64,000 nt of DNA from the NCBI RefSeq assembly GCF_032191835.1, contig NC_083223.1, positions 151,962,001 through 152,026,000 of the forward strand, read 5' to 3'. Made by a program: the position numbers and the translations under genes. The notes under the pieces are model-generated. The model did not search any database, was not told the origin of the DNA, and worked only from the letters and a program-made list of their open reading frames with translations. Of the stretch, positions 6,101 through 53,790 are shown piece by piece (positions within the stretch are counted from its first letter, which is position 1; the number at the start of each line of letters is the position of its first letter). The stretch is from Heteronotia binoei (Eukaryota).

Positions 6101-6194
6101 CCATCCGGGACCTTCCGAACCAGCCGCCGCTGGTCCAACAAACCTCTCCATGAGCCTCTGTTGCGCCCGCCGCTCCAACCGATGAGCGACTGAG

Positions 6195-22498: not shown

Positions 22499-22641
22499 NN
22501 NNNNNNNNNNNNNNNNNNNNNNNNNNNNNNNNNNNNNNNNNNNNNNNNNNNNNNNNNNNNNNNNNNNNNNNNNNNNNNNNNNNNNNNNNNNNNNNNNNNN
22601 NNNNNNNNNNNNNNNNNNNNNNNNNNNNNNNNNNNNNNNNN
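22499..22641. other. Assembly gap (143 N)
   Basis: Run of N characters. Confidence 1.
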
Positions 22642-35252: not shown

Positions 35253-35553
35253 GGAGGAAAGGAAAGGTCCCCTGTGCAAGCACCAGTTGTTTCTTACTCT
35301 GAGGTGACGTTGCTTTCACGATGTTTTCACGGCAGACTTTTTACAGGGTGGTTTGCCATTGCCTTCCCCAGTTATCTACACTTTTCCCCCAGCAAGCTGG
35401 GTACTCATTTACCGACCTTGGAAGGATGGAAGGCTGAGTCAACCATGGGCCTGCTACCTGAATCCAGCTTCCGCCGGAATCAAACTCAGGTCGTGAGCAG
35501 AGAGTTCAGACCACAGTACTGCAGTACTGCTGCTTTACCACTGCGCCACGGGA
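35253..35553 (-). mobile_element. Sauria-type SINE
   Basis: tRNA-like head CCCGTGGCGCAGTGGTAAAG, conserved core GAGTACCCAGCTTGCTGGGG and a CCTTT-type tail. Confidence 0.8.
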
Positions 35554-35578
35554 GACAGAACTATAAATAACAGTGTAT

Positions 35579-36886
35579 GACCTCCAGGGTCATCTAGTGC
35601 ACCCCCCCTGCACAATGCAGGAAACACACAACTACCTCCCCCTAAATTCACAGAATCTTCATCGCTGTCAGATGGCCACCTAGCCTCTGTATAAAAACCT
35701 CCAAGGAAAGAGAGCCCACCACCTCCCGAGGAAGCCTGTTCCACTGAGGAATCACTCTAACAGTCAGGAAATTCTTCCTAATGTTGAGCCGGAAACTCTT
35801 TTGATTTAATTTCAACCCATTGGTTCTGGTCCTACCTTCCGGGGCCACAGAAAACAATTCCACACCATCCTCTAGATGACAGCCTTTCAAGTACTTGAAG
35901 ATGGTGATCATATCACCTCTCAGCTGCCTTCTCTCCAGGCTAAACATGCCCAGCTCCTTCAACCGCCCTGAGACACTTCGGTGCGAAGGGCGGGGTATAA
36001 ATCCCAATATAAATAAAATAAATAAATAAACCTTTCCTCATAGGACTTGGTCTCCAGACCCCTCACCATCTTCGTCGCCCTGCTCTGGTCACATTCCAGC
36101 TTGTCTACATCTCTTTTAAAATGTGGTGCCCAAAACTGAACACAATACTCCAGGTGAGGTCTCCCAGAGCAGAGTAAAGCAATACCATCACATCACGTGA
36201 TCTGGACACTATACTTCTGTTGATACAGCCCAAAATTGCATTTGCCTTTTTAGCCACCACATCACACTGTTGACTTATGTTCAGCGTATGATCCACTAAG
36301 ACCCCTAGATCCTTTTCGCACATACTACTGCTAAGACAAGTCTCCCCCATTGTATAACCATGCATTGGATTTTTCCTACCTAAATGCAGAACTTTACATT
36401 TATCCCCATTAAAATTCATTTTATTGGTTTTAGCCCAGTTTTCCAGCCTGTCAAGATCTCCCTGTATCCTGTTTCTGTCTTCTACTGTATTTGCAACCCC
36501 TCCCAATTTAGTATCATCGGCAAATTAAATATGCATTCCCTCTATTCCTTCACCCAAATCATTTATAAAGATGTTGAACAAAACAGGTCCCAAGACAAAT
36601 CCTTGAGGCGCTCCACTTGTCCCTCCTCTCCAGGAGGATGAGGAACCATTCACAAGCACTCTTTGGGTGCGATCTGTCAACCAGTTACAGATCCACCTAA
36701 CGGTAACAGGATCCAAACCACATTTTACCAACCTGTCAACAAGGATAGTATGTGGAACCTTATCAAAAGCCTTACTGAAATCAAGATAAATGATGTCTAC
36801 AGCATTCCCCTGATCCAGTAGGGTAGTCACTTTCTCAAAAAAAGAGATCAGGTTACTCTGACAAGACTTGTTCTTGAGAAAACCAT
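35579..36886 (-). mobile_element. CR1 (element Z) RT C-half and 3'UTR
   Basis: [45 protein letters not shown] and FSLERRQLRGDMI, followed by the CR1 3'UTR. Confidence 0.92.
35965..36028 (+). mobile_element. 64-bp L2-family tail insertion in the CR1
   Basis: GCCCTGAG..GGGCGGGGTATAAAT..(AAAT)n flanked by AACC (35961-35964 and 36029-36032). Confidence 0.75.
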
Positions 36887-37677
36887 TACTTTGTTTGTTA
36901 ACCATGCAGACCTTCTCTTATACCTGTTTGTACCTTTCCTAACTTGTGGTATATATTTTATCTGAGCTTCTAGGATTGTATTTTTAAATAGCCTCCAAGC
37001 TTCCCCAAGGCTTTTGACTGTATTTACCTTTCCTTTCAGTTTCCTCTTCACATGCCTCCGCATCTCAGAGAATTTACCCCTTTTAAAGTTAAATATGGTT
37101 GTGCTGGTCTTTTGGGGCATCTCCCTATTTATATAAATAGTGAAATCAATAACGTTATGGTCACTGCTCCCAAGCGGTGTGATCACTTTTACATCTCTCA
37201 CCAGGTCTTGGGCATTACTTAGGACCAAATCCAGGATCGCCCCACCCCTGGTAGGTTCTGTGACCATCTTCTCCATAGCACAGTCATTGAGAGCATCTAG
37301 AAACTCAGTCTCTTTCTCTCGACCAGAACACATATTGACCCAATCAATCTGCGGGTAGTTAAAGTCACCTATGACAAAACAGTTTTTTCGTCTAGCCACC
37401 ATCTTTAAGCCTTCCATCATATTATAGTCATCCTCTGTCTTTTGATTTGGTGGGCGATAACAAACTCCCATAGTTAAATTGTCTTTTGGGCCCTCTATTT
37501 CAACCCAAAGCATTTCTATAAGGGAGTCTAATTCTCTGACTTCAGTCTTACTGGACCATATGCCCTCTCTGACATACAGAGCCACCCCACCTCCAACCCT
37601 TCCCTTCTTATCCTTCCGGTATAACTTATATCCAGGAATCACCATGTCCCACTGATTCTCCTCATTCCACCAAGTTT
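36883..37677 (-). pseudogene. Internal endonuclease fragment of a second CR1 subfamily (X)
   Basis: Open frame TWWNEE..GGGVALYV..VIGDFNYP..LDLVL..SDH. Fused to element Z RT through a CCAT microhomology at 36883-36886. No tail. Confidence 0.85.
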
Positions 37678-37920
37678 GTAAAACAGTAGGATTTTATAAT
37701 AATATTAAAAGGTCATAAAAGACTTGTAGAATTTAAAGGTAATATCTATGTACTAATTTTGAATACTTCCAGGTATAATGAATTATACTTTTTTCTTTGT
37801 CTTTTTAAATGTAGCAATAACTGTAATCTACTCTTTCATTTTCTGTACCCTATCCCTGATCTTTTCCCCAATTCCCCAATTTTCCCTGTAAAACTTAACA
37901 AAAATTGTTAAAAATAAAAA
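37678..37920 (+). mobile_element. 3' end of a poly(A) retroelement (L1-C)
   Basis: AT-rich, L1-3'UTR-like sequence ending in an A-rich tail, immediately followed by one copy of the 13-bp TSD AGGAAGAGGAAGG. Confidence 0.65.
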
Positions 37921-39129
37921 AGGAAGAGGAAGGCGGTGGTGATTGGTGACTCCTTGCTCAGAGAGGTGGAGTCCAAAGTGTGCCGACTGGACTTATCATC
38001 CGAGAGGTCTGCTGTCTGCCGGGTGCACGCATCCATCATGTGACAGAAAGGATTGGAAGACTTATCAAGCCCACAGATTACTATCCTTTCTTGCTGATCC
38101 ATGTGGGGACGAATGATACTGCCCATCACAGCCCTGAATGTACTAGAAAAGACTATGTGGCTCCGGGTCAGAAGGTGAAGGAGCTGGGCGCACAGGTTGT
38201 GTTCTCGTCAGTGCTTCCTGTTGAAGGCTGTGGCTTAGGACAAGAAAGAAGAATACTTCAAACAAACGACTGGCTACATCGATGGTGCCGTCAGGAAAGA
38301 TTCAGATTTCTGGACCATGGCTTACACTTTTGAGATGGTGGCCTTCTATTGGGAGATGGTTAGCACCTTACGGCTGTAGGGGAAAGGGTGTTTGGTAACA
38401 GCCTTGCTAACCTAATAAGGATGGCTTTAAAATAAATTGTACGGGGGAGCGAGACAATAATTCAAAGCCTTGTATGATGCCAGAAACTGGGGATAAGAAC
38501 ATTAAAGATTTGCAGAGAGTGGCGCATACACTAGGTAATGTTAGCTTGCAGGCTTGTATGGAAACTAAACTCTCGGGATGCATAAAATGTGGATTCCGAT
38601 GTCTCTACACTAATGCACAGAGTATGGGAAACAAACAGGAGGAACTGAAAGTCCTAATATGGGAAAGAGACTATGACATAATAAGCCTTACTGAAACTTG
38701 GTGGGATGACACTCACAAATGGAATATTAGGATTCAGGGGTACAACTTATTTAAAAGGGACAGACAAATGAGAAAGGGCAGAGGCATAACAGTATATGTG
38801 AAGGAGGTATATACTTGTGAGGAAATATGTGAATCTGAGCATGGCAGTGCAGTTGAGAGTCTCTGGGTAAAAATAAAAGGAATAAGAAATAACAGTTATA
38901 ATATTGTGGGGGTCTGCTATAGACCACCAAGCCAGGCAGAGGACTTGGATGAGATACTCCTACAACAGATTGCAGAGTTCTCCAAGAGAAGGGATGCAGT
39001 GATCATGGGAGATTTCAGTTACCCAGACATCTGTTGGAAGTCCAACTCTGCTAAAAATGAAAAGTCAGATAGATTCCTCATTTGTCTTGCTGACAACTTC
39101 CTTTTTCAGAAAGTGAGGAAGGAAACAAG
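37921..39129 (+). pseudogene. CR1 (element Z) ORF1 C-half (SGNH esterase) and ORF2 endonuclease
   Basis: RKAVVIGDSLL, CLPGARI, LIHVGTNDT; then [24 protein letters not shown] and DNFLFQKV. Confidence 0.92.
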
Positions 39130-42100
39130 CGGTGCAAGAAGTTGAAATTCTCCCCTCCACAATCGCCGACCATTCACCCATTATGTTATCTTTAAGTACC
39201 TCTAAAAAGAAGTCAGGATGGAGAATGAATCTAAGTCTCATGAGGGATAAAAGATTTATCCGATACATTGAGGAAGAAATGAAAAATTTTTTTCACACAA
39301 ATATCCAGAGTGGCGTTTCTTATACTACTATTTGGGAAACCAGCAAGGCCTATTTTAGGGGACTGGTCATCAGTTATAGTGCTAGAAAGTGGAAGGAAGA
39401 CAGCAGTAATTTGGTGAAATGGTCGGAATTAATTAAAATTAAAGAATCGCAGCTGAAAACCAATCCCACATTAAAGGAGTTAAGGACAGAGATTAGGAAT
39501 CTCCAACATAAAGTTCATTTAATTTTTTCAGATCAGGTAGAAAGAAAGATAGCCTACTCCAAAGCCTTTTTTTTTGAGAACGCCAATAAACCGGGTAAGT
39601 GGCTGGCATACAAAGTCAGGAAGGAAAGAGGGAAAAAAGTGATAAAATCGTTAAAGGATAAGAACGGGCAAAATACCTCGGTTTTAGAAGAAATGAAAGT
39701 AATAGTGCAGGAGTTCTATAAGAATTTATATAGAAAACAGGGAAACCATGAGTCTGATCAACAAGATTATTTGAAGAACAGGGTCCGGACTTTATTATCT
39801 AATGAACAGAAAGAAATTTTAACGGCTCCAATTACGATGTGTGAAATAGTAGAAGCTTGGACAAAAATTAAAAGTAATAAGGCGCCTGGACCTGATGGTA
39901 TTCCTCCGGAATATTACATAACCTTTAAGGAGAATATAATAGATCCTTTTAAAAATCTATTAGACGAGGTTTGGTGTTCGGCCAAAATCCCAGAGTCGTG
40001 GAGGTACAGTAATGTAGCTCTTATCCCCAAGCCTGGGAAAGACCCTGATAATATTGGAAACTATCGCCCTATATCTTTATTAAATACAGATTATAAAATA
40101 TTTACGTCAATTCTGGCAAGTAGATTAAAACAGGTACTGAGGGAAACTATACATACTGATCAATCTGGATTTTTACCAAAAAGACAAATGCACACAAATG
40201 TTAGGCTGTTATTTAATTTTTTGGAATACTCGGAGTTTAATAGGGATAAACAGTTAGCCTTTTTATTTCTCGACGCGGAGAAGGCCTTTGATAATTTAGA
40301 ATGGAATTTTATGTTAGAACTCTTGGAAAAATCTAATTGTGGGGCAAAATTTGTTGAAAATATACGGGCTATATATGACAAACAGTTTGCTAGGATAATC
40401 GTTAATGGTGACTTAACAGAAGAAGTCCATCTTACCAAGGGTACGAGACAAGGTTGTCCCCTTTCTCCCTTACTGTTTATTTTTTCTCTTGAAGTTTTAA
40501 TTGACTCAATTAGGTTGGATGACAAAGTTGAGGGGATAAAGGTTAAAGGAGAAAACTATAAAATATTAGCTTACGCAGATGATATGGTTCTTGTGTTGCA
40601 AAATCCTTTGGACTCAATAGAGACGGTTTTGAATCATTTGGAAGAATATGGGAAGGTTGCCGGCTTAAAAATAAATAAAAGTAAGTCGAAGTGGCTAACC
40701 AAAAATATGACGGCACAGGCAATTGCGGATTTGGAAAGAAAATCAGGATTTAAAAGAGAGAAAAAAATCAGATATTTAGGTATAGTTGTTTCGGAAAAAT
40801 GCAGTGCCACTTATGAAAATAATTATGTTCCTTTATTAAAAGAAATAGAGTCTTTATTCAAATGTTGGGTTAATTTGAAACTTTCATTTATGGGCAGAGT
40901 GTCATTACTGAAAATGAATATTCTTCCCAAAGTTTTATTTTTGTTTCAATCGGTGAATTTTGCTATGAGGGCTCCTTTTCTTAAGAAATTAAATCAATTG
41001 GCTAGAAATTATGTTTGGCAAGGAAAGAAACCTCGAATAGGCTGGAAAATACTAGCTGACAAAAAAGAGAACGGAGGTTTAGGGCTACCTGATTTTGAGA
41101 TTTATCATACTGCTTGTTCAATTTGTTGGTTGAAAGACTGGGTAATGTTAGAAAACACCCGTGTGTTAGCAATAGAAGGGGCCGATTTACAAGCCGGTTG
41201 GCACGCTAATATGTGGTATATTAAGAAACCACAAAATTACTTTAAAAATCATTTAATTCGTCAGTCTTTATTGCTAACTTGGACAAAAATAAAAAGGAAA
41301 ATCTATGACAAAACGCCTAGGTGGATATCCCCAATGGAGGCATCTATTCGTCCACAACTGTGGTCTCCCGAAAAATCTCTAAGATATTCGGATTTATTAG
41401 ATGAGAAGAATAAAATGAGGAGGAAGGATGACTTAGAACAAAGTGGAATTACTCTGGATTGGTGGGTAATGACCCAAATTATGGCTAAATATAATTGTGA
41501 TAAAATTGTTGGGTTCACGAGAACAAATTTTGACTTTGACAAGTTAATAACAGATAAGACTGGGAAAACGATAAAGAAGGTTTATAATTATTTACTACAA
41601 ATTAAATTGGAGGACGAATCGGTTAAAAACGTAATGGTGAAATGGTCATCGAATTTAAAATACAATATAACGTTGGAACAATGGGCAATGTTATGGCGGA
41701 ATAATTTTAAGATCATAAAACCGGTTAATTACCGGGAGAATTTTTTCAAACTCTTTCACAGGTGGCATATTACACCGGTTTTAATAAACAAAATTAATCA
41801 CGACTTCCCACCTAATTGTTGGAAATGCGGAGTGAAGATTGGAACCTACTATCATCTATGGTGGACATGTAAGGTGTCCAAAAAATACTGGAAAGGTATT
41901 CATAGAATTTTGACTGAAATTTTGAAGATTAATTTTCCGCTTAAACCGGAGTTTATGTTATTGTCCTTAGTACGTGGGATGGTTCCCAGAGAGGATGAAT
42001 TCATTGTAGTTTACATTGTAACGGCGGCTAGAATGTTATTGGCTCAAAATTGGAAATCTAAAACATCCCCAAAAAGGGAAGAATTAATTTACAAAATTAT

Positions 42101-42596
42101 GCAGTTAATGGAAACAGACATATTGGTTAACACAATACATGGAAAATTGAAGGAGGACGCAATAAAAAAATGGGAAAAGGTATATATATGGTTAGAGAAA
42201 AATTAAAAATAGGTTAGGATAAAAGATTATAATATTTTATATTCTGTATATTGGATAACGGTAGTACTGTTTAAATTAAAGTTATAATATAACATAATAA
42301 TATATTGTTTAAATTAAAGTTATAACAAGTTGAATATTGGGAATTTTATGCCACAGTCATACCTTAACTTGGATAAAGGAAGGGTGTTATAGGATAATGT
42401 TTATCCTATAAATTCTGTTACAGGGGTTGAATAAGTAATTTATGATTTGAGGATATCTAAGGAGGTATGTACTTTATTATTTTGTCGTATGTGTAATGTA
42501 AATTTGTTTGTGGTATCATTGTTTTGGTTTTTTATGTATTGCAATGGATGAATAAAATTATTGAAACTCAAAAAAAAAAAAAAAAAAAAAAAAAAA
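39130..42596 (+). mobile_element. 5'-truncated young L1 (L1-A)
   Basis: Uninterrupted ORF2, 3'UTR, AATAAA at 42551 and a 27-nt polyA (42570-42596). No TSD. Confidence 0.95.
39132..42206 (+). CDS. L1 ORF2p (EN C-terminus, RT, Cys-rich domain), 1024 aa open, N-terminally truncated
   Basis: [37 protein letters not shown] and CWKC..HLWWTC. Confidence 0.93.
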
Positions 42597-43494
42597 GAAG
42601 ATACAATTCTGGCACATGCTTAACTTGTATTTTCAAGATTTTTTGAATCCAAATATTAACTTGAGCCCAATATTTCCTGGCTTCTTTGCATTGCCACCAT
42701 ATATGGAACAACGATCCTTCAACTTCTCGGCATTTCCAACATTTATTAGAGTATGTGGGGTAAATTTTGGCCAGTCTATTTGGTGTAAGATACCATCTAT
42801 ATACCATTTTATATAGATTTTCTTTGAGATCAGTTGGCTTTATTAGTTTTAAATTCTGTTTCCATAATTTTTCCCATTCATCCAGATCAATATTATAGCC
42901 AAAATCCTTAAGCCAGCGGATCCAAGCTTCTTTTACAACTTCATCCTGCATCTTAACTTGAAGTAGCCAATCATACGTTTTAGAAATTATCTTCTGCTTG
43001 GACTCTAAGATAAGATCTAATTCAATTGGTTTATTCGAAAAGCCCCTTTCTTTGTCTTTCTGAAATCTTGATTTGAGTTGACACTGGAGCCACCAATTTA
43101 ACTTAGATAGTTCTTCCTCAATCAAATCATTTTGGCTATTCAACAAATAGGCATAATCTTGTGGGTTATCCCAATTATACAAGTTGGGGTGAGTCAGAGC
43201 TTCTATCGGAGATAACCACTTTGGAGTATAAGTATACATCAGCTTAATTTCATCCCAAATCTTATACAAGGATCTTCTTATTTCGTGTCTGAAAAAGCGT
43301 CCAGTTTTTACAGGAGTGTGATACCACATATAATTGTGCCAGCCTTCTCCCAAACCTACGCCTTCAATAGTCATTAGCCTCTTATTATCTAGCTTACACC
43401 AATCCCTTAACCATGCAATACAACAAGCCTTATAGTACAGATTCCAATCTGGGAGAGCAAGACCACCTCTTGATTTGCTGTCTTGTAAAATTTT
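42597..43494 (-). mobile_element. L1-B ORF2 3' segment (opposite orientation to the rest of L1-B)
   Basis: KILQDSKSRGGLALPDW...CWKC..HIWWQC..PELYLL; continues the frame that stops at 49010. Confidence 0.92.
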
Positions 43495-45247
43495 CCGGAA
43501 AGATGGCGGAGTGACGCAAAGCTCCTTTCCCCGTCTCGGGAGGGAACTTTGTTTGTGGGGTAATCGAGGGGGCTTCCCGGCCGGGAAGTACCTCTTAAGG
43601 AGCTGTCTGGAGACGCTCCGAAGCCTGGGGGGCTTTCTGGACGTGGGGGAGGAACGGAGGTTCCTCACTCAGTGCCAGTTTTCCCCCTGGCCGATACCCC
43701 AGCAACACCTCGGTGCCTAACTGTGCCGCCGGGAAAGGGAGATTGGAGAGGAACCTTAACTCCCTCAAGTGCACCCCGTAGCGTTTTTTCCTACCTGGGT
43801 CGTCCCACCCTTGGAATGCGAATGGTGCAGCTCATGGCGATGGCGAGAAGAAAATAAAGCTGGTAAGCGGTTTGTGTGCTGCACAGGCTGATAGGGAGCG
43901 GAGCCGCGGCGTGTGGGCATCGGTGGAGGACGTGAATGGCTGAGGAGGCGGGCGGCTTGGCAGCTTAGCGGCGACTGAATGAGCGATCGTTTTGAGGGGA
44001 AACAACAAAGAGCTTGGCTGTGATCAAAGAATATTGGCAGAAGGAAGACAGGGGGAAGTAGGGGGTTGAGAAGCAATTCTTCTTTTCCTGTCTCTGAGAC
44101 ATTAAAAGTGGCTGTCAGTCCGTGACCGATGTGAGAACTGTGATCTGAGTTAGGAGAGAGGAAGCTGTCGGTAATGGCGGACGGGAGCTGAAGTTCTCCT
44201 TCAGGAGGCCGGACGTGGAAGACGCAGGCGGCGCTGGTGGTGAGCGGAGACAGAAACTTTCTGAGTGCGTTTGACGATCTTAACTCTCCCCCCCCCTTCG
44301 CTTGTCCACCTCTGGTTTTCTTTATTTTTTTTGCCTTTCATCTGCGTTGTCGCTGGAGCCTTATTTTTCTTTTGTTATTTTACTTTTCACCTTGTTGAAG
44401 AGGATGGGTTTTGTTTACGCAAATACTTATTTTTGGGATAATTAATCGTTGGTATCAGCTCAAAGGGTAGAGTAGTGGTTCTTAGCAGCTTTTGCTGCGG
44501 CTGCTCTCTATTGAAGATTGTGGTTTTTAAATTTATAACTATTGGAAACGGATTAGGCACTATATTTGGATCTTTGAAACCTTCCTTCTTGGAGTATAAG
44601 AGACTGGAACTTTTGGACTCTAGAAAACATTTTCCTTTTCATCTTTCAAAACGTGGGGATTTATTAGGGCTAAAACTAGAACTTGGCTTTTAGAACACTG
44701 AAGACAGCTAAAAATCTATTTGACACTAAGACACTAAGACATTAAAATTGGACACTAAGCTACCAAGACAATATTAAGATCCTGAAACAGTTAAGTAACA
44801 AGAGAAGGGAAGAAAGAAGGAAGAAGAAGGAGCAGAGAAGATAAGGAACAGAGAAGATAAGACTGTGTAAATACTTATGTTGATTATTTCTTGACTCAGA
44901 ACTGTAATTTTTGAGTTATTTACTTATTCACTTACTATAAATAATTCTAGGGCTAAATTTTGATAGGTAATCCCTAATGCGTTAATGAAATGAATTGATT
45001 TAATATCTGATACCTAATAATTGATTGAATTATTGACTGAGCTCAAAGAATTATTGATTTTATAGAATTGCTGTATTACTTATTGAGCATTTTTATTGGA
45101 TCCCAGATAAGCTTGAATCACTGACTGAGCTTAAGAAGTTATTTAGCTGAATATTGATTATTGATAGTCTTTCCGCTTATTGATATATTGAGCTGTTGAA
45201 AATTACAAATTGGGTCAGTTTATAAGGTTAGTGACAGTAGCATCATT

Positions 45248-46237
45248 ATGACGGAAACAAAGATTAAAAAATACCTACAAGGTACTCCTCCGGCAGGGGG
45301 AGGTAAGGTGCAAGTCGCTGTCAACCAAGACGCGTTGGAAAAATTACAGAGTACAGTTACTGCTGGATTTAAACAGAACCAAGATGCTTTAGATGGACTG
45401 AAAACAGACTTGATGACTCAAATTAGGAAAACCAATGATCAGTTGGCAGAATTTCAAAAGCAGCTGTTGGCCAATACACAACAAGTTCATGGTTTTACAG
45501 CTAAAGTTGAGAGAATGGAAGATCGGGAGAAGCGCACAATCAATACGGTTAGAGAAAACCAAACAGGATTGATGGAGCTAGAAGAACGGGTGATGAGGCT
45601 CGAAATGGAGAAAGCTTCAACTATTCTTCGCTTTCAAAATCTACCAGAAGAAAAGGAGGAAGATATAATCAGTAAAATTAGAGGCATCTTAATTATTGAT
45701 GATGAAGAACTATTGGAAGAAGGTCCAAGAGATATTCTTTGGGCCAAAAGAGTTTCTTCGAGCTACATAAGGAAATTCAAACTTCCCAGAGAAGTTCAAG
45801 TAAAGTTCGCCCGTCCAGAAACTGTGGAAAGGATTCTGCGGAAGGCAAGAGATTATGAAATGAATTGGAAGGGAACGAAGATCAAAGTATTGAAAGAGAT
45901 ACCCTGGAGTGTCCGACAGAGGAGATTCAAGTTCAGGAAATTGTCTACTTGGTTAATGAAGCAAGAAATTCAATTTAGATGGCTTGTCCCGCAAGGTCTT
46001 TTCTTTACATTTCAAACTAAGAGATACAATATTACTACTGAGGCAAAGATGGAAGAATTTTGTGATGAGTTTGTGAAGCGAAATGGATCTGAATTGGGAG
46101 ACGAACAGGAGGTAGAAGGAGCTAAGAAGTTCACTGATGATAAGTCTCCCAAAAAGAAACCTGAGAAGATCAAAACCAGGCTCCAGACTAAGAAGGACTC
46201 AGCCATGATATCGGATAGTATTCACTCACCAAAATGA
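45248..46237 (+). CDS. L1 ORF1p (coiled coil, RRM, CTD), 329 aa intact
   Basis: Heptad-rich N-half, ILRFQNLPEE, PREVQVKF and RQRRFKF..FRWLVP. Stop overlaps the ORF2 start as ATGA (46234-46237). Confidence 0.9.
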   Translation: MTETKIKKYLQGTPPAGGGKVQVAVNQDALEKLQSTVTAGFKQNQDALDGLKTDLMTQIRKTNDQLAEFQKQLLANTQQVHGFTAKVERMEDREKRTINTVRENQTGLMELEERVMRLEMEKASTILRFQNLPEEKEEDIISKIRGILIIDDEELLEEGPRDILWAKRVSSSYIRKFKLPREVQVKFARPETVERILRKARDYEMNWKGTKIKVLKEIPWSVRQRRFKFRKLSTWLMKQEIQFRWLVPQGLFFTFQTKRYNITTEAKMEEFCDEFVKRNGSELGDEQEVEGAKKFTDDKSPKKKPEKIKTRLQTKKDSAMISDSIHSPK

Positions 46238-49010
46238 ATTCTAAGATGGAAACTAAAATACTCTCTTTGAACGTCAATGGATTAAATGAATCCGGGAAGA
46301 GGAAGAGAACTTTTCTGCAATTGAAAAAATCTGGCGCCCACATTATCTGTCTACAAGAAACGCATATTAGGAAAGACAATGTGAAGTATTTGGAAAACAA
46401 GAAATTGGGTACTTTATATGCTTCATGTGATCCTTTTAAAAAGAAGAAAGGGGTAGCTATTTTTGTTCCTCATCACATTAAGTCGAGCTGCCTATTTTCG
46501 GATGAACAAGGAAGAATCATCATAGTCGAGTTGGAGTTAAATGGATTTAAAACAATCCTTGGGAACATTTATGCCCCTAACGAAAATCAAGAAAAATTTT
46601 ATCAAGTATTGTGCACGAAACTTAGGGAATTCAATTCAGATAGGTACTGCATAGTTGGCGATTACAATGCGATATTTGATATCAAAATGGATAAAAAATA
46701 TGACGACCCTCAAAAAAAGAAGAAGAATCGGAATTTACTACCTAATTCTTTTTTGAAGCTGGCTGAAGAATTAAACTTAGTAGATGCCTGGAGAACAAAG
46801 AACCCGAACACGACAAATTTTACTTTTTAATCACATTCACATAAATCTTGGTCCAGAATAGATATGACCTGGGTATCCTTGAGTATGATTTTGTCAGTTA
46901 ACCAAGTTGATATCCTCCCTCAGTCATATGCTGATCACAACCCAATTTTGTTATCTCTATAGGAGCAATCAAGAAATCCTCGATGGTCTCTCAATTTGCA
47001 AATTTTAAAAGAAACTCAATTTCTGGAAGTAGCTAAAAAAGAGATTCAGGAATTTTTTAAACTCAACTTGGAGAAAGACACGAAGATCCCAGTTATTTGG
47101 GACGCATTCAAGGCCTTCTTTAGAGGAGTCGCCATCCGTTACTCAAAGAGGAGGAAGAGAGAACAAAGAAAATCTTACAATGAACTTGTAACAAAATTGA
47201 AATACTATGAGAAACAACAGAAAACTGGGAATCCAAGAGAGGTGAAGGCCAGAATTACTTTTATCCAACATCAGATAAATATTCTTTTAGCAGAAGAAAT
47301 GGAGAAAAAACTAAAATGGACAAGACAAAACTATTTTGAAAATGCTAACAAAGTGAGTAGATGGTTGGCTTACAAATTAAGGAAGGAAAAGGAGAAGAAG
47401 ATCATAAAAATGTTGAAAAATGATGCCAAGGAGGAGGTGTTTCAAAATTTTCAAATGAAAGACATTATTCAAAACTTTTATAGGAATCTGTACAAAAAGC
47501 AAGAGATTGAACAATTCAAGCAAGAAAATTATATTAAAGGAGTCGAAATGAAACAATTAACAAGGGAACAGCAAGCAAGTTTGGAGAGCCCAATCTCAAT
47601 GCAGGAATTGGTTGAGGTAATTAAAACCCAAAAAAGTAACAAGACCCCAGGTCCAGATGGACTTCCGATTGAGTTTTTTAGAGCCTTTGAAGATTTGTTA
47701 TTGCTGCCCTTTAAGAAGGTAATTGAGAATGTCTATCATTCAGGCGAGACTCCAGATTCTTGGAAAGAAGCGCTTATTACTCTCATTCACAAAGAAGGCA
47801 CCGACCCATCAGAAATTAAAAATTATAGACCAATTTCACTTTTAAATAGTGATTATAAGATTTTTGCAACAATTTTAGTGAATAGATTGAAGAAGGTGAT
47901 TACCGACTTAATTCATGAGGATCAAACAGGTTTCGTCCCAGGACGACTAATGAATCAGAATGTGAGGCTACTTTTAAATGTGATTGAATATTACAGAGAT
48001 CACCCGGACAAAGAATTTGCTGCTATTTTTGTGGATGCAGAAAAGGCTTTTGATAATGTTAATTGGAATTTCACCAAAGTGACATTGGATGCGATTGGTT
48101 GTGGTGATAGGTACCGCAGAATGGTCGAAGCGATTTACTCAAAGCAGAATGCGAGAGTGAGTTTTAATGGAGTGATGGGACGGTGGCTCAGTGGTAGATC
48201 ATCTGCTTGGGAAGCGGAAGGTCCCAAGTTCAATCCCTGGCATCTCCAAAAAAGGGTCCAGGCAAATTGGTGTGGAAAACCTCAGCTTGAGACCCTGGAG
48301 AGCCGCTGCCAGTCTGAGAAGACAATACTGACTTTGATGGACCAAGGGTCTGATTCAGTATAAGGCAGCTTCATATGTTCATATGATGTCTGATTTAGTA
48401 GAAATACAACAAGGCACTAGACAGGGATGCCCGTTATCCCCATTGCTTTTTATCTTGACGTTAGAACCTTTAATAAAGAAGATTAGAGAAGACAACAAAA
48501 TTCAAGGAACCAGAATTAATAACGTGGAATTTAAGTCTTTGGCGTTTGCGGACGATTTAGTATTTATCTTGGAACAACCCATCTCTTCGATAGTCCCTCT
48601 GAAGCAAAGACTACGAGAATTTGGAGAAGTATCTGGTTTCAAACTGAATGTGTCTAAGACAAAAATTTTAATGAAAAATATGGAGAAAATTCAAGTTGAA
48701 TCTTTAGAACAGCTTTCAGGATTTAAGCAAGAAAAAAAGATAAAATACCTTGGAATTTATTTGACGAATGATTTAAAGACTTTGTACAGAGACAATTATG
48801 AAAAAATATTGAAAGAAATACGGGATGATCTAACTAACTGGAAAGAGCTCCATATTTCGCTCTTAGGTAGAGTCGCTACAATAAAGATGAACATTCTTTC
48901 AAGGATCTTATTTCTCTTCCAAACAATCCCAATCACCTTACCCAAACTATTTTTCCAGAAACTTAACTCTATGATCAAGTTGTTTATCTGGCAAGGGGAA
49001 AAGGCCAGAA
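46234..49010 (+). pseudogene. L1-B ORF2 (EN-RT), with stops and a SINE insertion
   Basis: SLNVNGLN, CLQETH, VGDYN, DHNP, QGCPLSP and FADD. Stops at 46828-46830 and near 46960. Confidence 0.92.
48178..48383 (+). mobile_element. Young tRNA-derived SINE inserted in L1-B ORF2
   Basis: A box TGGCTCAGTGG, B box GTTCAATCC and a TTCATATG tail. TSD TGATG (48173-48177 and 48384-48388); removal restores FNGVMSDLVE. Confidence 0.9.
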
Positions 49011-49490
49011 AAAAAGGCTTCTTTTCTTATGTTCAGAGTAAGAAAAAGTGAAAGGACATGGTAAGCCTGTTGCGAGGGCAGGAAAGTGAAATTGTAACAG
49101 GTAATGAAGAGAGGGCGGAACAGCTCAATTCCTACTTTTCCTCAGTCTTCTCTTCTGAGGGAAATGGTGCTCAACATGGCAAAAACAGAACATATAAGAA
49201 GGGTATGAAGTTCCAACCTAGGATCAGCGTAGGGGTAGTACATAAACACCTAGTTTCTATAAATGAAACCAAGTCCTCAGGGCCAGATAAACTGCATCCA
49301 AGGGTTCTGAAAGAGCTTGCAGATGTAATTTCTGAGCCTCTGGCCATTATTTTTGAGAATTCTTGGAGAACAGGAGAGGTGCTGGAAGATTGGAGGCGGG
49401 TGAATGTTGTCCCCATCTTCAAGAAGGGAAAAAAAGATGATCTGGGTAACTACCGACCTGTCAGCTTGATGTCTATCCCTAGAAATGCTT
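49011..49490 (+). pseudogene. CR1 (element Z) ORF2 tether / RT start
   Basis: KKGFFSYVQSK, AEQLNSYFSSVF, SSGPDKLHPRVLKEL and NYRPVSLMSIP. Confidence 0.9.
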
Positions 49491-49494
49491 TAAC

Positions 49495-50218
49495 ATCCTG
49501 AGGGAGTTTCTGCTCCAACAGGACGTGGACCTGGCTTGCGTGACCGAGACCTGGGTGAGGGAAGGGGAGACAGTGGCTCTCTCCCAAATGGCCCCCCCGG
49601 GATACTCGGTCTTTCACCAATCGCGGACCAGCGGGCGGGGGGGAGGAGTGGCGTTACTCATACGGGAGGATTACTCCTTTCGGGCCCTCCCGGACCCAAG
49701 GATCGATGGTATTGAATGTGCCGGTTTGGCGTGGGATGCCGGAGAGGGGTTGGCAGTCTGGTTGGTGTACCGTCCGCCTAACGCACCAACCGGCGCCTTA
49801 CCATCACTATTGGAGGCAGTGGCGGGCTGGGCGTTGAGGTTCCCGAGGCTTATGGTCTTGGGTGACTTCAACGTCCATGCCGACGACACGGCCTCCACTC
49901 AGGCGATGGACCTAGTGTCTTCCATGGCGACACTGGGGCTCTCTCAATTTGTTACGACTCCCACGCACCAAGCCGGACACACACTAGACCTGATCTTTGC
50001 GTCCGGGATTTCGGTGAGCGATATCGCGCTGGAAGCGGTACCATGGTCGGATCACCTAGCCCTTAAGGCTCGTGTGGGGACGCCACCCCAACCCTGTATG
50101 GGCGGAGAGCCTATTTTGGCTCACCCTCGGAGCCTGATGGACCCGGAACGGTTCCAAACGGCCCTGAGGGAACCCTGGCCCACTAGCAATTCCCTCGATG
50201 GCCTTGTGGAAACCTGGC

Positions 50219-50249
<31 letters not shown>

Positions 50250-52623
50250 TTTTATTTTTATATCCCGCCCTCCCCGCCAGGCGGGCTCAGGGCGGCTAAC
50301 AGACATGACCGTTGGCAAGACCGACTAACCAGGGCCATTGACGAAATAGCACCCCGGCGCCCTCTGCGCCCTCGTAGGAGGTTGGCCCCATGGTACACCT
50401 TGGAATTGCGCCAACTCAAACAAGGGCTCAGACGACTAGAGAGGCAGTGGAGACATACTCGGGACGAAGCAATGAGAACATCCTACAGAACGCTTATGAA
50501 GTCGTATGAGATGGCAGTCAAGGCCGCAAAGAAAAATTACTTTGCAGCCAAGATTGCATCCGCAGATTCGCGCCCAGCACAACTGTTTAGAATAATTGGG
50601 GACCTTATAACTTTGCCACAAGGCAAACCAAACATTAGAGAATTGGAGATTGGCTGTGAGGCATTTGCGAAATATTTTGCGGATAAAATCTCATTGCTCC
50701 GCCAAGACCTGCCTACCACCTTGGAAACAGTGAGTGAAATTGAGGCTCCGTGCCTGTTTTCGGGGTTGGTCCTGGATCGCTTCGACCCGCTCGACCTGGA
50801 GGAAGTCGATGGGATCCTCTCCGCTGCTCGCCCAACAACATGTGATTTGGATCCTTGCCCCTCTTGGCTGATTAAATCTTGCCAGAGGGAGCTCAGAAGT
50901 CCTCTACGGGACTTCATAAATAGATCCCTCGTAGAGGGGCACTTCCCAACACCTCTGAAAGAGGCGTTGGTTCGCCCTCTCTTAAAAAAATGTACAGCAG
51001 ACCCGGCCGAATTGGCGAATTACCGTCCGGTGTCTAATCTACCATTCCTAGGCAAAATTATTGAGAGGGCAGTGGCGTTGCAGCTACAGAGGTTCCTAGA
51101 TGACGCTTCCGTCCTTGACCCGTGCCAGTCTGGGTTCCGACCGGGCCACGGGACGGAGACAGTGCTGGTCGCCTTGGTGGATGACCTCCAGCGGCATCTG
51201 GATCGGGGCGGCTCTGCGGTACTGATGTTATTAGACCTGTCGGCGGCATTTGATACAGTCGACCATCAGTTACTAAAGCGCCGCCTTGCCGACATAGGGG
51301 TTAGGGGGCTGGCCTTACAGTGGCTTTCCTCCTTCCTCTCTGATCGGGGACAAAGGGTGGCCATTGGCGATCCCAGAGGCACACACTTGATTGTGGGGTG
51401 CCTCAGGGAGCAGTTCTCTCCCCAATGCTGTTTAACATTTATATGCGCCCCCTTGCCCAGATTGTCCGGAGGTTTGGGCTGGGTTGCCATCAATATGCAG
51501 ATGACACCCAGCTCTATCTACTAATGGACGGCTGGCCTGGCTCCGCCCCAGGGAACCTGGATCGGGCCTTGCAGGCTGTAGCGGCGTGGCTTAGATTGAG
51601 TGGGTTGAAGTTGAACCCAGCGAAGACAGAGGTCCTTTGCGTGGGTCGCGGCGCCCAGGGAGGGGAAATAGCTCTCCCAACCTTCGACGGCGCACCATTG
51701 GAACCAGTGCGCCAGGTAAAGAGTTTGGGTGTTTTACTGGAGCCTTCATTATCAATGGAGGCCCAGATAGCAGCCACTGCCAAGTCAGCATTCTTTCATC
51801 TGAAGCGGGCAAGGCAGTTGGCCCCCTTCCTGGAACGCCGCGACCTCGCAACAGTGATCCATGCAATGGTCACCTCAAGATTGGACTACTGTAATGCCCT
51901 CTACTTGGGGCTACCTCTGTGCCGGACTCGGAAGCTGCAGCTAGTGCAGAATGCGGCGGCCAGGCTGTTACTGGGGCTCCCGAAATGGGAGCACATACAG
52001 CCGGGGCTGCGCGGACTGCACTGGCTGCCAGTTATCTACCGAGTCCAGTACAAAGTGTTGGTTATTACCTTTAAAGCCCTATATGGCCGAGGACCTGCCT
52101 ACCTAAGGGACCGTCTCTCCCCGTATGAACCCCAGAGGGCACTGAGGTCAGCAAGTAAAAACAAAATGACCATCCCTGGGCCGAGAGAGGCCAAACTCCA
52201 AAACACCAGAGTACGAGCCTTTTCAGTTGCGGCACCTGCACTGTGGAACCAGCTCCCGGAGGAGGTGCGGGCCCTGCGGAACCTCGACCAGTTCCGCAGG
52301 GCCTGCAAGACTGCCCTTTTTAGACACGCCTATAATGATACGGACTGCTGAGTTGCAATGAACGAAGAACCGCCATCTCTAACATCATTTAAACTGGCAG
52401 ATTCAGCGCCAGAACAGCTATTACTGCCAGATATATATATAATGTAATGTAAAATTAAGTATTTTAACTGAATTAACGGGTTTTTATATGTGTAATTTTA
52501 ATTGCTAATCTAATGTTTTATTATTTATGTTAATATATTACTTACTGTTAGCCGCCCTGAGCCGCTTTGCGGGGAGGGCGGGGTAGAAATAAAATTTATT
52601 ATTATTATTATTATTATTATTAT
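49495..52623 (+). mobile_element. L2 LINE, nearly complete ORF2 plus 3'UTR and (ATT)n tail
   Basis: VTETW, GGGVALL, LGDFNVH, SDH, YRPVSNLPF, LDLSAAFDTVDH, PQGAVLSP and YADD. CpG-rich with few lesions. Tail GCCGCCCTGAG..GGGCGGG. No TSD. Confidence 0.92.
50221..50312 (-). mobile_element. 92-bp antisense L2-family tail inserted in the L2
   Basis: (TAA)n plus TATCCCGCCCTCCCC..GCTCAGGGCGGCTAACA. TSD TGGCAA (50215-50220 and 50313-50318); removal restores ETWQDRL. Confidence 0.88.
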
Positions 52624-52889
52624 AACATCGAGCAGTTCTGTTACCGGTAGCTACAGCTGGTGCCACAAAATGGCAATTGCAACGGTGAGGCTTCAGGATA
52701 AACAAGGAGTCCCAGCTTCCACTGAAAGTCCTGGGTTTTGTCACATCCCATGCTTAGAAACTCCTCTTCTGGAGTCCCTTCGGGTATCCGGGTGTCCGGA
52801 CCCCCTCAACCCATGCAATTAAAGGGGGATCGCAAGCGCTGTGATTCCCCCTTGACGTCACTGTGCTGAAGCCGGAACAGGAAGCCGCA
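52624..52889 (-). mobile_element. Probable 5' end of L1-C
   Basis: Follows the second TSD copy (52902-52890) on the minus strand. CpG-rich start TGCGGCTTCCTGTTCCGG. L1 identity is inferred from the TSD pairing only. Confidence 0.55.
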
Positions 52890-53384
52890 CCTTCCTCTTC
52901 CTATATTGGGGAGCAGAAGCTCCAGGCTTCTTATCCACAGGATCTTGAGAAACTTTCTTCAAGCTTCGCGGAGGCTGGGGAAGTAGCCTTTGTTCCAATA
53001 GTTCAGGATCAGTTACTGTGGGGAGATCCTGAAACCTATTGCTGATCAGCAGACGCTCAGAACATCTCCTGATTTTCTTTCTCCTTCGGGTTACATTTTT
53101 CCAGGAAGCCTCTTCCTGTGTTGGGTTCTCTTCTAATTACTGAGATACCACTTCCTCTCCCTCTTCTTGTCCTTTCAAGAGCACGTCATGCGTTCTGTAA
53201 GAAAATCCTCACCTTCCATTATACACTGCAGTGTGGACAATCATGCCTCCAGTCCCCGTATCTTCTCCTCCAGCAGGGCCACTAACTTACACTTGCTGCA
53301 AGTGTGATTGCTGCTACTCTCAGGTAGAAATACAAACATCCCACAGTCTTTACACGTCATTGCCTCTGTTCCCTCACCAGCCAT
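52890..53384 (-). pseudogene. CR1 (element Z) ORF1 N-half (zinc finger / leucine zipper)
   Basis: MAGEGTEAMTCKDCGMFVFLPESSSNHTCSKCKLVALLEEKIRGLEA, ending ..SAPQYRKRK, which joins in frame to 37921. Confidence 0.88.
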
Positions 53385-53790
53385 GCTGGTGCAATCCATT
53401 TCAAATTTTTCTTTATCTTGACCTCTCTTTAAATTCCACTACCAACTGCCACTTGAAACTACTTATGAGTAACTACCCCCTTCCTACAGAACCCCCAGGC
53501 CAAGAACCCTTCCGCTCACGCCTGTGGCAAGATGAGCCTTGCAAATTAAAGGCTCAAGCCCCCACCCACCTCTGACTCAACAGCCAGAGCAACAGCAGAG
53601 GATGGGGCCAGCAATTACCCCCAGGCAAACAAGCTCTCCTAACCCAGCAACAGCTACACAAAAGACACACAAAAGCAATCAGAAACCCCTCTCCAGCAGG
53701 CACCAAGCACTCATACAGTTCCCTTCCACAGCAACCCTAGGTAATGCTCCCCAGCAGTTTTAGAAAAGCAATTCAACTCTCAGCTTACCA
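53385..53790 (-). mobile_element. Probable CR1 5'UTR
   Basis: Contiguous upstream of the ORF1 ATG; the outer boundary is uncertain. Confidence 0.45.

What the first reader, a model, noticed from the sequence alone, without database searches (positions are those of the whole stretch)
35579..53790. Apparent 15-kb inversion that splits a full-length CR1 and an L1, with LINE DNA at both junctions
Seen: CR1 ORF1 N-half (53384-52890, minus) joins in frame to the C-half (37921 onward, plus) as ..APQY-RKRK-AVVIGDSLL. Both halves carry the same 13-bp AGGAAGAGGAAGG, the TSD of an L1 whose ends are now on opposite strands (52889-52624 minus; 37678-37920 plus). The CR1 RT stops at YRPVSLMSIP (49490, plus) and resumes about 25 aa later at GFLKNKSCQ (36886, minus). 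So 37678 to about 49.5-52.6 kb is flipped. The right junction holds a TSD-less L2 and the left holds a tail-less CR1-X fragment. Inference: a retrotransposition- or repair-coupled inversion with deletion, possibly L2-mediated, which is little documented for non-L1 LINEs.
Basis: partly seen in the sequence, partly recalled or inferred. Interest (0 to 1): 0.82.

Follow-up and report, generated by a model that had tools for sequence, protein, structure and literature searches.

The report
Inverted segment inside a LINE nest
One old CR1 retrotransposon, already carrying a poly(A) retrocopy, was broken in two places and its middle re-joined backwards; this is a neutral rearrangement in junk DNA of a squamate-like genome, and the LINE DNA at its junctions resembles known L1-associated break repair.

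Summary
The 13-mer AGGAAGAGGAAGG occurs once on each strand (37921+, 52902-). Across it the two CR1 ORF1 halves join in frame.

All four CR1 pieces tile a single Varanus CR1 colinearly and without overlap:
- 53.4-52.9 kb, minus
- 37.9-39.1 kb, plus
- 49.0-49.5 kb, plus
- 36.9-35.6 kb, minus

About 70 bp is missing at the RT break. Domain-identity calibration and trees favour placing the RT C-part with the split CR1's lineage, not with the neighbouring CR1-X fragment.

Short reads show that the CR1-X fragment is cut at both ends relative to its high-copy family. It joins the RT piece at an ATGG overlap, as in endonuclease-independent LINE capture at a break.

I conclude a real two-break inversion (about 0.7). 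Misassembly is unlikely but not excluded.

- The flipped ancestral DNA is 37678-49480. Most of it is a twin-primed L1 and a deletion-associated L1 of unknown timing.
- The L2 may have a 7-bp TSD (TAACATC, chance 0.4%), so it could be an ordinary insertion 10 bp from the junction. L2 mediation is not shown.
- The identity of the split retrocopy as an L1 is unverified.

Retrotransposition-associated inversions are already known for human L1.

The parts
35579..36886 (-). S1: the CR1 RT C-terminal part (from [10 protein letters not shown]) to the 3' UTR, assigned to the split CR1 (CR1-A). It carries one stop, a frameshift and a ~70-bp L2-tail insert at about 35962-36030.
   Evidence: Pfam RVT_1. 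Colinear with L003 7577-8720. Groups with CR1-A-type relatives in the RT tree at 96/92 support, branch length 0.35. Identity calibration.
36887..37677 (-). S2: an internal fragment of the high-copy CR1-X family (EN from ..ETWW to ..AWLTNKVM). It has no tail and no TSD, and sits as filler at the left junction. The bases 36883-36886 (ATGG on the minus strand) fit both S2 and S1.
   Evidence: EN is 34% identical to CR1-A EN. Pfam Exo_endo_phos. Read loose ends at 36883 and 37677 give consensus extensions that read MEAVKGKKDSF and ..DIVGISETWW. Relative L002 has CAACATGGATTT at the RT position.
37678..37920 (+). S3: the 3' end of a poly(A) retrocopy 'Z' with an A-rich tail.
   Evidence: The sequence ends ...AAAAATAAAAA directly before the 13-mer. 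Depth in bin 37797-37937 (its last ~124 bp plus the TSD) is 3-6. No similarity to other L1 copies in the window.
37921..37933 (+). Target-site duplication copy 1 (AGGAAGAGGAAGG).
37921..39130 (+). S4: CR1-A ORF1 C-half (GDSL/SGNH esterase-like) and the ORF2 endonuclease up to ..KETSGA.
   Evidence: Pfam Lipase_GDSL_2 (below its cut-off) and Exo_endo_phos. Colinear with L003 5274-6534. EN is sister to L002 in the tree.
39131..42597 (+). L1-E: a 5'-truncated L1 with an intact 1024-aa ORF2 remainder and a poly(A) tail. The left flank is CR1-A EN and the right flank is the inverted L1-F. There is no TSD. It replaces about 0.5 kb of CR1-A plus the 3' end of L1-F, so it is an insertion with target deletion.
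42598..43494 (-). L1-F: the L1 ORF2 segment equivalent to L1-E residues 639-944. It is the 3' segment of a twin-primed L1.
   Evidence: tblastn. Its start is contiguous, within 3 nt, with the end of L1-H on the reference copy at 17144-18619.
43495..49012 (+). L1-H: L1 5' UTR (starts GGAAAGATGGCGG), ORF1 (329 aa) and ORF2 up to ..WQGEKAR. It is the inverted 5' segment of the same twin-primed L1, and carries a tRNA-derived SINE at about 48177-48383.
49013..49480 (+). S9: CR1-A ORF2 linker to the start of RT (KGFFSYVQSKKK ... NYRPVSLMSIP).
   Evidence: Colinear with L003 7108-7506 and 51-58% identical to CR1-A-type relatives. Sequence.
49481..49497 (+). 17 bp of uncertain origin (AGAAATGCTT + TAACATC). 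It is either the continuation of retrocopy Z plus the left copy of an L2 TSD, or the 5' edge of the L2.
49498..52622 (+). S10: a 5'-truncated L2-like LINE (EN, RT, 3' UTR, (ATT)n tail) lying at or 10 bp from the right junction.
Evidence: Pfam EN and RVT_1. RT about 31% identical to S1. Tail sequence.
52623..52629 (+). Right copy of the candidate L2 TSD, TAACATC.
   Evidence: chance of a 7-mer match within a 40-bp zone is 0.37%.
52624..52889 (-). S11: the 5' part of retrocopy Z (GC-rich, contains TGACGTCA).
   Evidence: It lies directly after the minus-strand 13-mer. No homology to other elements in the window.
52890..52902 (-). Target-site duplication copy 2.
52890..53790 (-). S12: CR1-A 5' UTR and ORF1 N-half (Cys-rich N-terminus, ..NRFQDL.., ends ..APQYRKRK). 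It has two or three stops and one frameshift.
   Evidence: Matches L003 4843-4986.

Best explanation
**What it is.** A genuine two-break inversion inside a nest of LINEs.

**Sequence of events proposed.**
1. A roughly 4.4-kb full-length CR1 (CR1-A) lay on the minus strand.
2. A poly(A) retrocopy (Z) inserted into its ORF1 and made a 13-bp TSD.
3. Later the DNA broke once inside Z and once just after the RT motif YRPVSLMSIP.
4. The piece between the breaks (Z 3' end, TSD, ORF1-C, EN ... RT start) was re-joined in reverse.
5. About 70 bp of RT and the middle of Z were lost.

**Left junction.** The gap was filled by 795 bp copied from an internal part of a different, high-copy CR1 (CR1-X). I infer that the broken plus-strand end ...CCAT-3' annealed to AUGG in a CR1-X RNA and primed reverse transcription, as in endonuclease-independent LINE capture. 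Copying from a DNA template is the alternative.

**Right junction.** A 5'-truncated L2 lies at the junction or 10 bp from it. Whether it took part in the event is open.

**Shown:**
- the split and orientation of the pieces
- the tiling of one CR1
- the truncation of the filler at both ends
- the ATGG overlap in the window sequence

**Inferred:**
- that the ATGG overlap is a true microhomology (the CR1-A side comes from relative L002)
- the order of events
- the RNA origin of the filler
- end-joining as the joining mechanism
For: - **TSD pair.** The 13-mer pair is unique and on opposite strands, and gives an in-frame ORF1 join.
- **Tiling.** The four CR1 pieces map colinearly and without overlap onto one Varanus CR1. 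S12 maps to L003 4843-4986, S4 to 5274-6534, S9 to 7108-7506 and S1 to 7577-8720. Only a ~70-bp gap is left at the RT break. An unrelated CR1 fragment would begin within ±80 bp of that point only about 3-4% of the time (my estimate).
- **S1 is CR1-A-like, by identity.** Its RT2 segment is 59-60% identical to L003, L004 and P0049. The EN of those three is 46-52% identical to CR1-A EN but only 36-37% to CR1-X EN. Among reference pairs, EN identity of 28-43% goes with RT2 of 30-52%, and EN of 50-51% goes with RT2 of 63-65%.
- **S1 is CR1-A-like, by tree.** In the RT tree S1 groups with the L003/L004/P0049 clade (96/92, branch length 0.35). CR1-A EN has branch length 0.41, CR1-X EN 1.52.
- **Database relatives.** The best EN relatives reach 59% for CR1-A and 41% for CR1-X. 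S1 reaches 72%.
- **Read depth.** Depth rises 5'->3' along CR1-A (about 20, 65, 150) into the S1 range.
- **Filler.** In X21, 691 reads leave the window at 36883 and 1085 at 37677 (similar hundreds to over a thousand in X22 and X23). Their consensus sequences continue the CR1-X ORF. ATGG is shared at the S2|S1 joint.
- **Against misassembly.** There are no N runs and no inverted repeats at the breakpoints. Sequence is lost and filler is present at the junctions. The bin 37797-37937, between the left junction and CR1-A ORF1-C, is covered at depth 3-6 in all three runs of the one WGS sample, and no contradicting joint is among those listed.
Against: - No read was shown explicitly to bridge 36886/7, 37677/8, 49480/1 or 52623/4.
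- No same-genome reference copy of CR1-A or CR1-X could be obtained. The best database relatives reach 59-70% identity. The assignment of S1 to CR1-A is therefore at lineage level, not copy level.
- In the EN tree CR1-X also falls inside the same broad clade (91/97), on a long branch.
- Depth of about 150-170 over 37678-37796 is unexplained. It could mean that the S2|S3 boundary region is itself repeated.
- No un-inverted allele or ortholog was seen.
Confidence: 0.7

Rival explanations
1. One reading: a single L2 retrotransposition event caused the inversion. L2 reverse transcription was primed at a break in retrocopy Z (tail at 52623). The 5' end of its cDNA was ligated to the far end of the flipped segment. 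This would parallel L1 insertions with inversion of the reciprocal flank.
For: - The L2 tail abuts the broken Z 5' part, and the L2 5' end lies within 0-17 bp of the CR1 RT break.
- This topology matches L1-induced local inversions described in bioRxiv 2024.12.14.628481 and PMC7058536.
- An unrelated insertion landing that close to the junction by chance is about a 1% event (my estimate).
Against: - A 7-bp direct repeat TAACATC flanks the L2 at 49491-49497 and 52623-52629. The chance of such a match is 0.37%.
- EN alignments begin right after the left copy. This is what an ordinary TSD-forming insertion into an already formed junction would look like.
- In the published L1 inversion structures the TSD-like overlap does not flank the insert directly.
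- The left junction needs a second, tail-less RT or templated event anyway.
Confidence: 0.25
2. The RT C-part (35579-36886) and the CR1-X fragment (36887-37677) are together one independent, 5'-truncated CR1-X copy with an internal ~660-bp deletion. The split CR1 would then simply lack its 3' third. The inversion of ORF1 and Z would still exist, but its left breakpoint would be 37677/37678 only.
For: - Both pieces have the same orientation and are adjacent.
- Both are high-copy at >=95% identity with similar depth.
- CR1-X EN falls in the same broad clade as CR1-A in the EN tree.
- No copy-level reference for either family was available.
Against: - The RT piece starts only about 70 bp after the point where the split CR1 stops, on the expected side and strand.
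- RT identity to reference elements fits the EN of CR1-A, not that of CR1-X.
- S1 has a short branch while CR1-X EN has a long one.
- The best EN relatives reach 59% for CR1-A and 41% for CR1-X, while S1 has relatives at about 70%.
- The joint is out of frame.
Confidence: 0.1
3. Assembly artefact: a contig segment was mis-oriented, or the assembler switched loci inside the high-copy S1/S2 repeat.
For: - S1 and S2 have hundreds of near-identical copies.
- Junction-spanning reads were not demonstrated.
- The window has an N gap elsewhere, at 22499-22641.
Against: - There is no gap and no inverted repeat at any junction.
- A mis-orientation would not delete about 70 bp of RT, remove the middle of Z, or add a doubly truncated 795-bp filler.
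- The pieces still tile one CR1 exactly.
- The bin 37797-37937 next to the left junction is covered at depth 3-6 in the short-read sample, with no listed contradicting joint.
Confidence: 0.07
4. Replication-based template switching (FoSTeS/MMBIR) rather than breakage plus RNA-templated repair. The 795-bp CR1-X piece would be copied from a genomic CR1-X DNA copy during a microhomology-primed template switch that also produced the inversion.
For: - There is a 4-bp overlap (ATGG) at the S2|S1 joint.
- The insert is templated and comes from an abundant genomic repeat.
- The event combines an inversion with small deletions, which is typical of such events (my own knowledge of the mechanism).
Against: - Nothing here separates a DNA template from an RNA template.
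- The filler has an open 265-aa frame and about 1% private differences from its active family, which is also what a fresh cDNA would show.
Confidence: 0.15

Closest known systems
L1 retrotransposition-associated inversions and local rearrangements in human cells and cancers (Rodriguez-Martin et al. 2020, PMC7058536; bioRxiv 10.1101/2024.12.14.628481; PMC13526784)
   Same: - The inverted genomic segment is bounded by LINE-derived DNA.
- A tailed, 5'-truncated LINE sits at one junction.
- A deletion lies next to the break.
- The junctions are non-homologous.
   Different: - Here the LINEs are an L2-like element and a CR1, not L1.
- The event is germline and old, in a squamate-like genome.
- The L2 may carry an ordinary 7-bp TSD.
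- The second junction carries a tail-less internal LINE fragment.
- No ancestral allele is available.
Endonuclease-independent / non-classical LINE insertion at double-strand breaks (Morrish et al. 2002 as cited in PMC1920257; Sen et al. 2007, PMC1920257)
   Same: The CR1-X fragment:
- lacks a TSD
- lacks the 3' end and tail
- is 5' truncated
- joins the flank at a short overlap
- is accompanied by loss of target DNA
   Different: - It is a CR1 rather than an L1.
- It sits at an inversion junction rather than at a simple deletion.
- An RNA origin is not proven.
Twin priming (Ostertag and Kazazian model, as cited in bioRxiv 10.1101/2024.12.14.628481)
   Same: This applies to the nested L1-H/L1-F pair (42598-49012). 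The 5' segment is inverted relative to the 3' segment, and the breakpoints are contiguous in L1 coordinates.
   Different: It does not explain the CR1/Z inversion, because flanking target DNA (CR1 ORF1-C to RT) is flipped, not just the inserted element.
NAHR inversions between inverted repeats
   Same: Both give an inversion of several kb in repeat-rich DNA.
   Different: The breakpoints lie in non-homologous sequences (CR1 RT versus retrocopy Z). Sequence is lost and filler is gained. There are no inverted repeats at the junctions.

Membership tests
   Both halves match one Varanus CR1 ORF1 in order.
   Tiling is met, with a gap of about 70 bp. The subfamily question was tested only at lineage level: calibration and trees favour CR1-A over CR1-X. 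No same-genome consensus was available.
LINE (TPRT)-mediated inversion | A LINE 3' tail sits directly at one breakpoint (the primary RT end). | tested here: met
   The (ATT)n tail of the L2 ends at 52622/52623 and abuts the broken Z 5' part.
LINE (TPRT)-mediated inversion | The insert is not flanked by its own direct TSD, and its 5' end is joined to rearranged DNA. | tested here: inconclusive
   The candidate TSD TAACATC flanks the L2 (chance 0.37%). The 5' boundary of the L2 is ambiguous.
LINE (TPRT)-mediated inversion | An ancestral un-inverted allele lacks the insert. | not tested
   The related species' run X2 had almost no depth over S3 and the start of S4.
Endonuclease-independent (non-classical) LINE insertion | No TSD, and the 3' end and tail are missing. 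| tested here: met
   The family continues beyond both ends of 36887-37677 (loose ends). No flanking direct repeat was seen.
Endonuclease-independent (non-classical) LINE insertion | Microhomology between the insert ends and the flanks. | tested here: inconclusive
   The 3' joint shows up to 4 bp (ATGG), but the CR1-A side is inferred from relative L002. The 5' joint cannot be judged because the lost Z sequence is unknown.
Endonuclease-independent (non-classical) LINE insertion | The template is RNA (cDNA) rather than genomic DNA. | not testable with these tools
   No feature here distinguishes the two.
Twin-primed L1 (for 42598-49012 only) | An inverted 5' segment and a 3' segment meet at contiguous L1 positions. 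| tested here: met
   The end of H maps to reference position 18002 and the start of F to 17998.
Twin-primed L1 (for 42598-49012 only) | A TSD and a poly(A) tail flank the whole insertion. | not testable with these tools
   The 3' end was removed by the L1-E insertion.
NAHR inversion | Inverted homologous repeats at both breakpoints. | tested here: not met
   Self-BLAST of the window found none.
L1 identity of the split retrocopy Z | Homology to L1 5' and 3' UTRs or ORFs. | tested here: not met
   No similarity to the four L1 copies in the window. Only L1-type hallmarks are present: an A-rich tail and a 13-bp TSD.

The most novel reading that the evidence does not exclude
One germline event in which both outer broken ends were extended by reverse transcription of two different non-L1 LINE RNAs. 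An L2 RNA was primed at its tail on one end. A CR1 RNA was primed internally by a 4-nt overlap on the other end. The excised middle was then ligated back in reverse between the two cDNAs. This would be a natural, fixed example of RT-mediated repair producing an inversion outside mammals and outside L1.
Probability: 0.15. Interest if true: 0.6.

Novelty: new member of a known kind. Interest (0 to 1): 0.35.

Why it matters
If the junction fillers are cDNAs, this locus shows that CR1 and L2 reverse transcriptases of a reptile can patch chromosome breaks and accompany inversions. That is documented so far mainly for human L1, in cancer and in cell models. It would extend the behaviour to other LINE clades and to the germline.

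As it stands it is a neutral rearrangement in a repeat nest with no gene affected. Its practical value is as a well-resolved worked example:
- a TSD-anchored inversion
- a clean twin-primed full-length L1
- an L1 insertion with a ~1.2-kb target deletion, all within 18 kb

It is also a caution for repeat annotators, which would report these pieces as unrelated fragments.

Tried and rejected
- **Same-genome reference copies.** I looked for CR1-A and CR1-X copies through the protein databases. The best relatives were only 70% (linker piece), 41% (CR1-X EN) and 59% (CR1-A EN). Copy-level family assignment was therefore impossible.
- **Contig look-ups.** P0006 and P0010, the closest RT relatives, were not on record.
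- **Representative search with the RT piece.** It gave only 50%-cluster representatives. The first identity table was not decisive.
- **Identity of Z.** A sensitive BLAST of the two Z ends against the window found nothing. Rfam found only a SINE tRNA head.
- **Sequencing runs.** No run held more than 14% of the sampled words. The related species' run gave only 60-80-nt unitigs from repeats.
- **'Z is the L1-H/F element' (rejected).** This needs at least three reversals. The chosen model needs one inversion, one twin-priming event and one insertion with deletion. L1-H also has its own 5' terminus abutting F.
- **Inverted segmental duplication with complementary deletions (rejected).** The pieces never overlap.
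- **NAHR (rejected).** There are no inverted repeats.
- **Earlier scan notes.** They held nothing on this place.

Full report
**Setting.** The region 35.5-53.8 kb is a nest of non-LTR retrotransposons in a squamate-like genome. I infer the taxon from the tRNA-derived SINEs, the L2-type tails, and CR1 relatives in Varanus, birds and turtles. There is no N run in the region; the only gap in the window is at 22499-22641. Self-BLAST finds no inverted repeats at any junction.

**Segments**:

| Segment | Coordinates | Content |
|---|---|---|
| S1 | 35579-36886 (-) | CR1 RT from [10 protein letters not shown] to the 3' UTR |
| S2 | 36887-37677 (-) | EN-to-WLTNKVM fragment of a different CR1 (CR1-X; EN 34% identical to the other CR1) |
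| S3 | 37678-37920 (+) | A-tailed 3' end of a retrocopy Z |
| S4 | 37921-39130 (+) | CR1-A ORF1 C-half and EN |
| L1-E | 39131-42597 (+) | 5'-truncated L1 |
| L1-F | 42598-43494 (-) | L1 ORF2 segment |
| L1-H | 43495-49012 (+) | L1 5' UTR, ORF1 and most of ORF2 |
| S9 | 49013-49480 (+) | CR1-A linker to YRPVSLMSIP |
| S10 | ~49498-52622 (+) | L2-like LINE with (ATT)n tail |
| S11 | 52624-52889 (-) | Z 5' part |
| S12 | 52890-~53790 (-) | CR1-A ORF1 N-half and 5' UTR |

- AGGAAGAGGAAGG occurs exactly twice in 64 kb, once on each strand, at the ends of S4 and S12.
- S12 ends ...GASAPQYRKRK and S4 begins KRKRKAVVIGDSLLR, so the join is in frame.
- S12's Cys-rich N-terminus matches the ORF1 N-terminus of a Varanus CR1 (L003 4843-4986). 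S4 matches its esterase domain and EN (L003 5274-6534).
- S9 maps to L003 7108-7506 and S1 to 7577-8720.
- The four pieces, on alternating strands in the window, therefore tile one CR1 in order and without any overlap.
- Two stretches are missing. About 0.5 kb between EN and the linker is accounted for by the L1 insertions described below. About 70 bp (22-26 residues) is missing at the RT break.
- The decay of the pieces is comparable, with a few stops and frameshifts each.

**Does S1 belong to the split CR1 or to CR1-X?** No same-genome reference could be fetched; the best database identities were 70%, 41% and 59%. I therefore used three indirect tests.
- *Position.* S1 begins about 70 bp after the point where S9 ends, on the side and strand that an inversion predicts. 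I estimate about a 3-4% chance of this for an unrelated fragment.
- *Domain calibration.*
  - S1's RT2 segment is 59-60% identical to L003, L004 and P0049.
  - The EN of those elements is 46-52% identical to CR1-A EN but only 36-37% to CR1-X EN.
  - Among reference pairs, EN identity of 28-43% goes with RT2 of 30-52%, and EN of 50-51% with RT2 of 63-65%.
- *Trees.* S1 groups with the L003/L004/P0049 clade (96/92) on a short branch (0.35), like CR1-A EN (0.41, sister to L002). CR1-X EN sits on a branch of 1.52. CR1-X does fall inside the same broad clade (91/97), so this is a lineage-level result, not proof.

Read depth along CR1-A rises 5'->3' (about 20, 65, 150) into the range seen on S1. That is compatible but weak. 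Overall I put about 0.85 on S1 being the 3' part of the split CR1.

**Reads.** Three runs of one WGS sample of the same species label were laid on 35400-39600.
- S1 and S2 are high-copy, with depth in the hundreds at >=95% identity.
- In X21, 691 reads leave the window leftward at 36883 (577 and 486 in X22 and X23). Their consensus continues the CR1-X ORF as ...WLTNKVMEAVKGKKDSF.
- In X21, 1085 reads leave rightward at 37677 (1250 and 1114 in X22 and X23). Their consensus reads ...ENIDIVGISETWW upstream.
- S2 is therefore an internal piece of its family, cut at both ends and without a tail.
- The bases ATGG (36886-36883 on the minus strand) fit both CR1-X (GTAATGGAAG) and the CR1 RT (relative L002 has CAACATGGATTT). 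The plus-strand end ...CCAT-3' of the RT side could have annealed to AUGG and primed the copy.
- The bin 37797-37937 (the last ~124 bp of S3 and the TSD) has depth 3-6. No contradicting joint is among those listed.
- Depth of about 150-170 over 37678-37796 is unexplained.

**The right junction.**
- The L2 tail ends at 52622/52623 against the broken Z 5' part.
- On the left, TAACATC (49491-49497) repeats the 7 bp that follow the tail (52623-52629). The empirical chance of such a match in a 40-bp zone is 0.37%.
- EN alignments to CR1 ENs begin immediately after the left copy.
- If this is a TSD, the L2 is an ordinary insertion into a pre-existing direct joint between the RT break (49480) and Z, 10 bp away. 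It did not mediate the inversion.
- If the 17 bp belong to the L2 5' region instead, the L2 sits exactly at the joint. The local similarity to both alternatives is ambiguous.
- The chance of an unrelated insertion landing that close is also about 1%.

**The interior of the flipped segment has its own explanations.**
- L1-H ends (..WQGEKAR, ~49012-49015) and L1-F begins (43494) at L1 positions that are contiguous within 3 nt on the reference copy at 17144-18619.
- F's start abuts H's 5' terminus (GGAAAGATGGCGG...).
- H's internal end abuts an A-run of the CR1.
- This is the structure expected from twin priming of a full-length L1 inserted antisense into the CR1.
- L1-E has an intact 1024-aa ORF2 remainder. 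Its poly(A) tail abuts F at ORF2 residue ~945 and its 5' end abuts CR1 EN, with no TSD. It is thus an insertion with a ~1.2-kb target deletion that removed F's 3' end and about 0.5 kb of CR1.
- Neither event needs the large inversion, and their timing relative to it is unknown. If they came later, the piece that flipped was only about 2.5 kb.

**Mechanism and comparison.**
- The breakpoints lie in non-homologous sequence, DNA is lost, and filler is gained. NAHR is therefore excluded, and two breaks with end-joining (or a template-switching replication error) are indicated.
- The CR1-X filler meets the published hallmarks of endonuclease-independent LINE insertion: no TSD, no 3' end or tail, a short overlap at the joint, and an accompanying deletion (PMC1920257).
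- L1-induced inversions, including local inversion of the flank next to an insertion, are established in human cells and cancers (bioRxiv 10.1101/2024.12.14.628481; PMC7058536; PMC13526784).
- This locus is therefore a new member of a known kind, in other LINE clades and in a germline. The RT-mediated steps are inferred, not shown.

**Verdict.** The inversion is real with about 0.7 confidence. Misassembly is about 0.07. An independent CR1-X origin of S1 is about 0.1. The L2 role is unproven. Interest is moderate to low, because no gene is involved and the mechanism class is known.

Noticed in passing
window 42598-49012: A textbook twin-primed full-length L1. The 3' segment lies on the minus strand and the complete 5' segment (5' UTR with an AAGATGGCGG start, 329-aa ORF1, ORF2 to WQGEKAR) on the plus strand. 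The breakpoints are contiguous within 3 nt.
   Followed up: yes
window 39131-42597: A young 5'-truncated L1 with an uninterrupted 1024-aa ORF2 remainder and a 28-nt poly(A) tail. It has no TSD. Its flanks imply a ~1.2-kb target deletion (CR1 EN end-to-linker plus the 3' end of the twin-primed L1).
   Followed up: partly
window 37678-37796: Read depth of about 150-170 in all three WGS runs. The next 140 bp are single-copy (depth 3-6) and the related species has almost none. Part of the 'Z 3' end' seems to be a species-specific repeat, or the boundary with the CR1-X fragment is shared by other copies.
   Followed up: no
window ~35962-36030: A ~70-bp insert inside the CR1 RT piece resembles the terminal stem and tail of the L2 3' end (compare 52540-52600). 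It is an extremely 5'-truncated L2-family copy. Contigs of the related species skip it.
   Followed up: partly
window 48177-48383: A tRNA-derived SINE (Rfam tRNA hit at 48177-48248, 36.6 bits) is inserted in the L1-H ORF2. It is similar to 5202-5353 elsewhere in the window.
   Followed up: no
window ~35262-35560: A tRNA-headed SINE on the minus strand abuts, and apparently truncates, the CR1 3' UTR. It is very high-copy in the reads.
   Followed up: no
window 16866-18619: Another L1 ORF2 3' part on the minus strand is 60-68% identical in protein to L1-H/F. It served as the reference for contiguity.
   Followed up: partly
window 49492-49506 versus L002 2319-2333: AACATCCTGAGGGAG, at or just inside the L2 5' edge, resembles the CR1 RT sequence expected right after ..SVPG(K) (AAGATCCTTGAGCAG in a relative). 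This hints at a homeologous joint between the L2 cDNA and the broken CR1 end. It may be chance.
   Followed up: no
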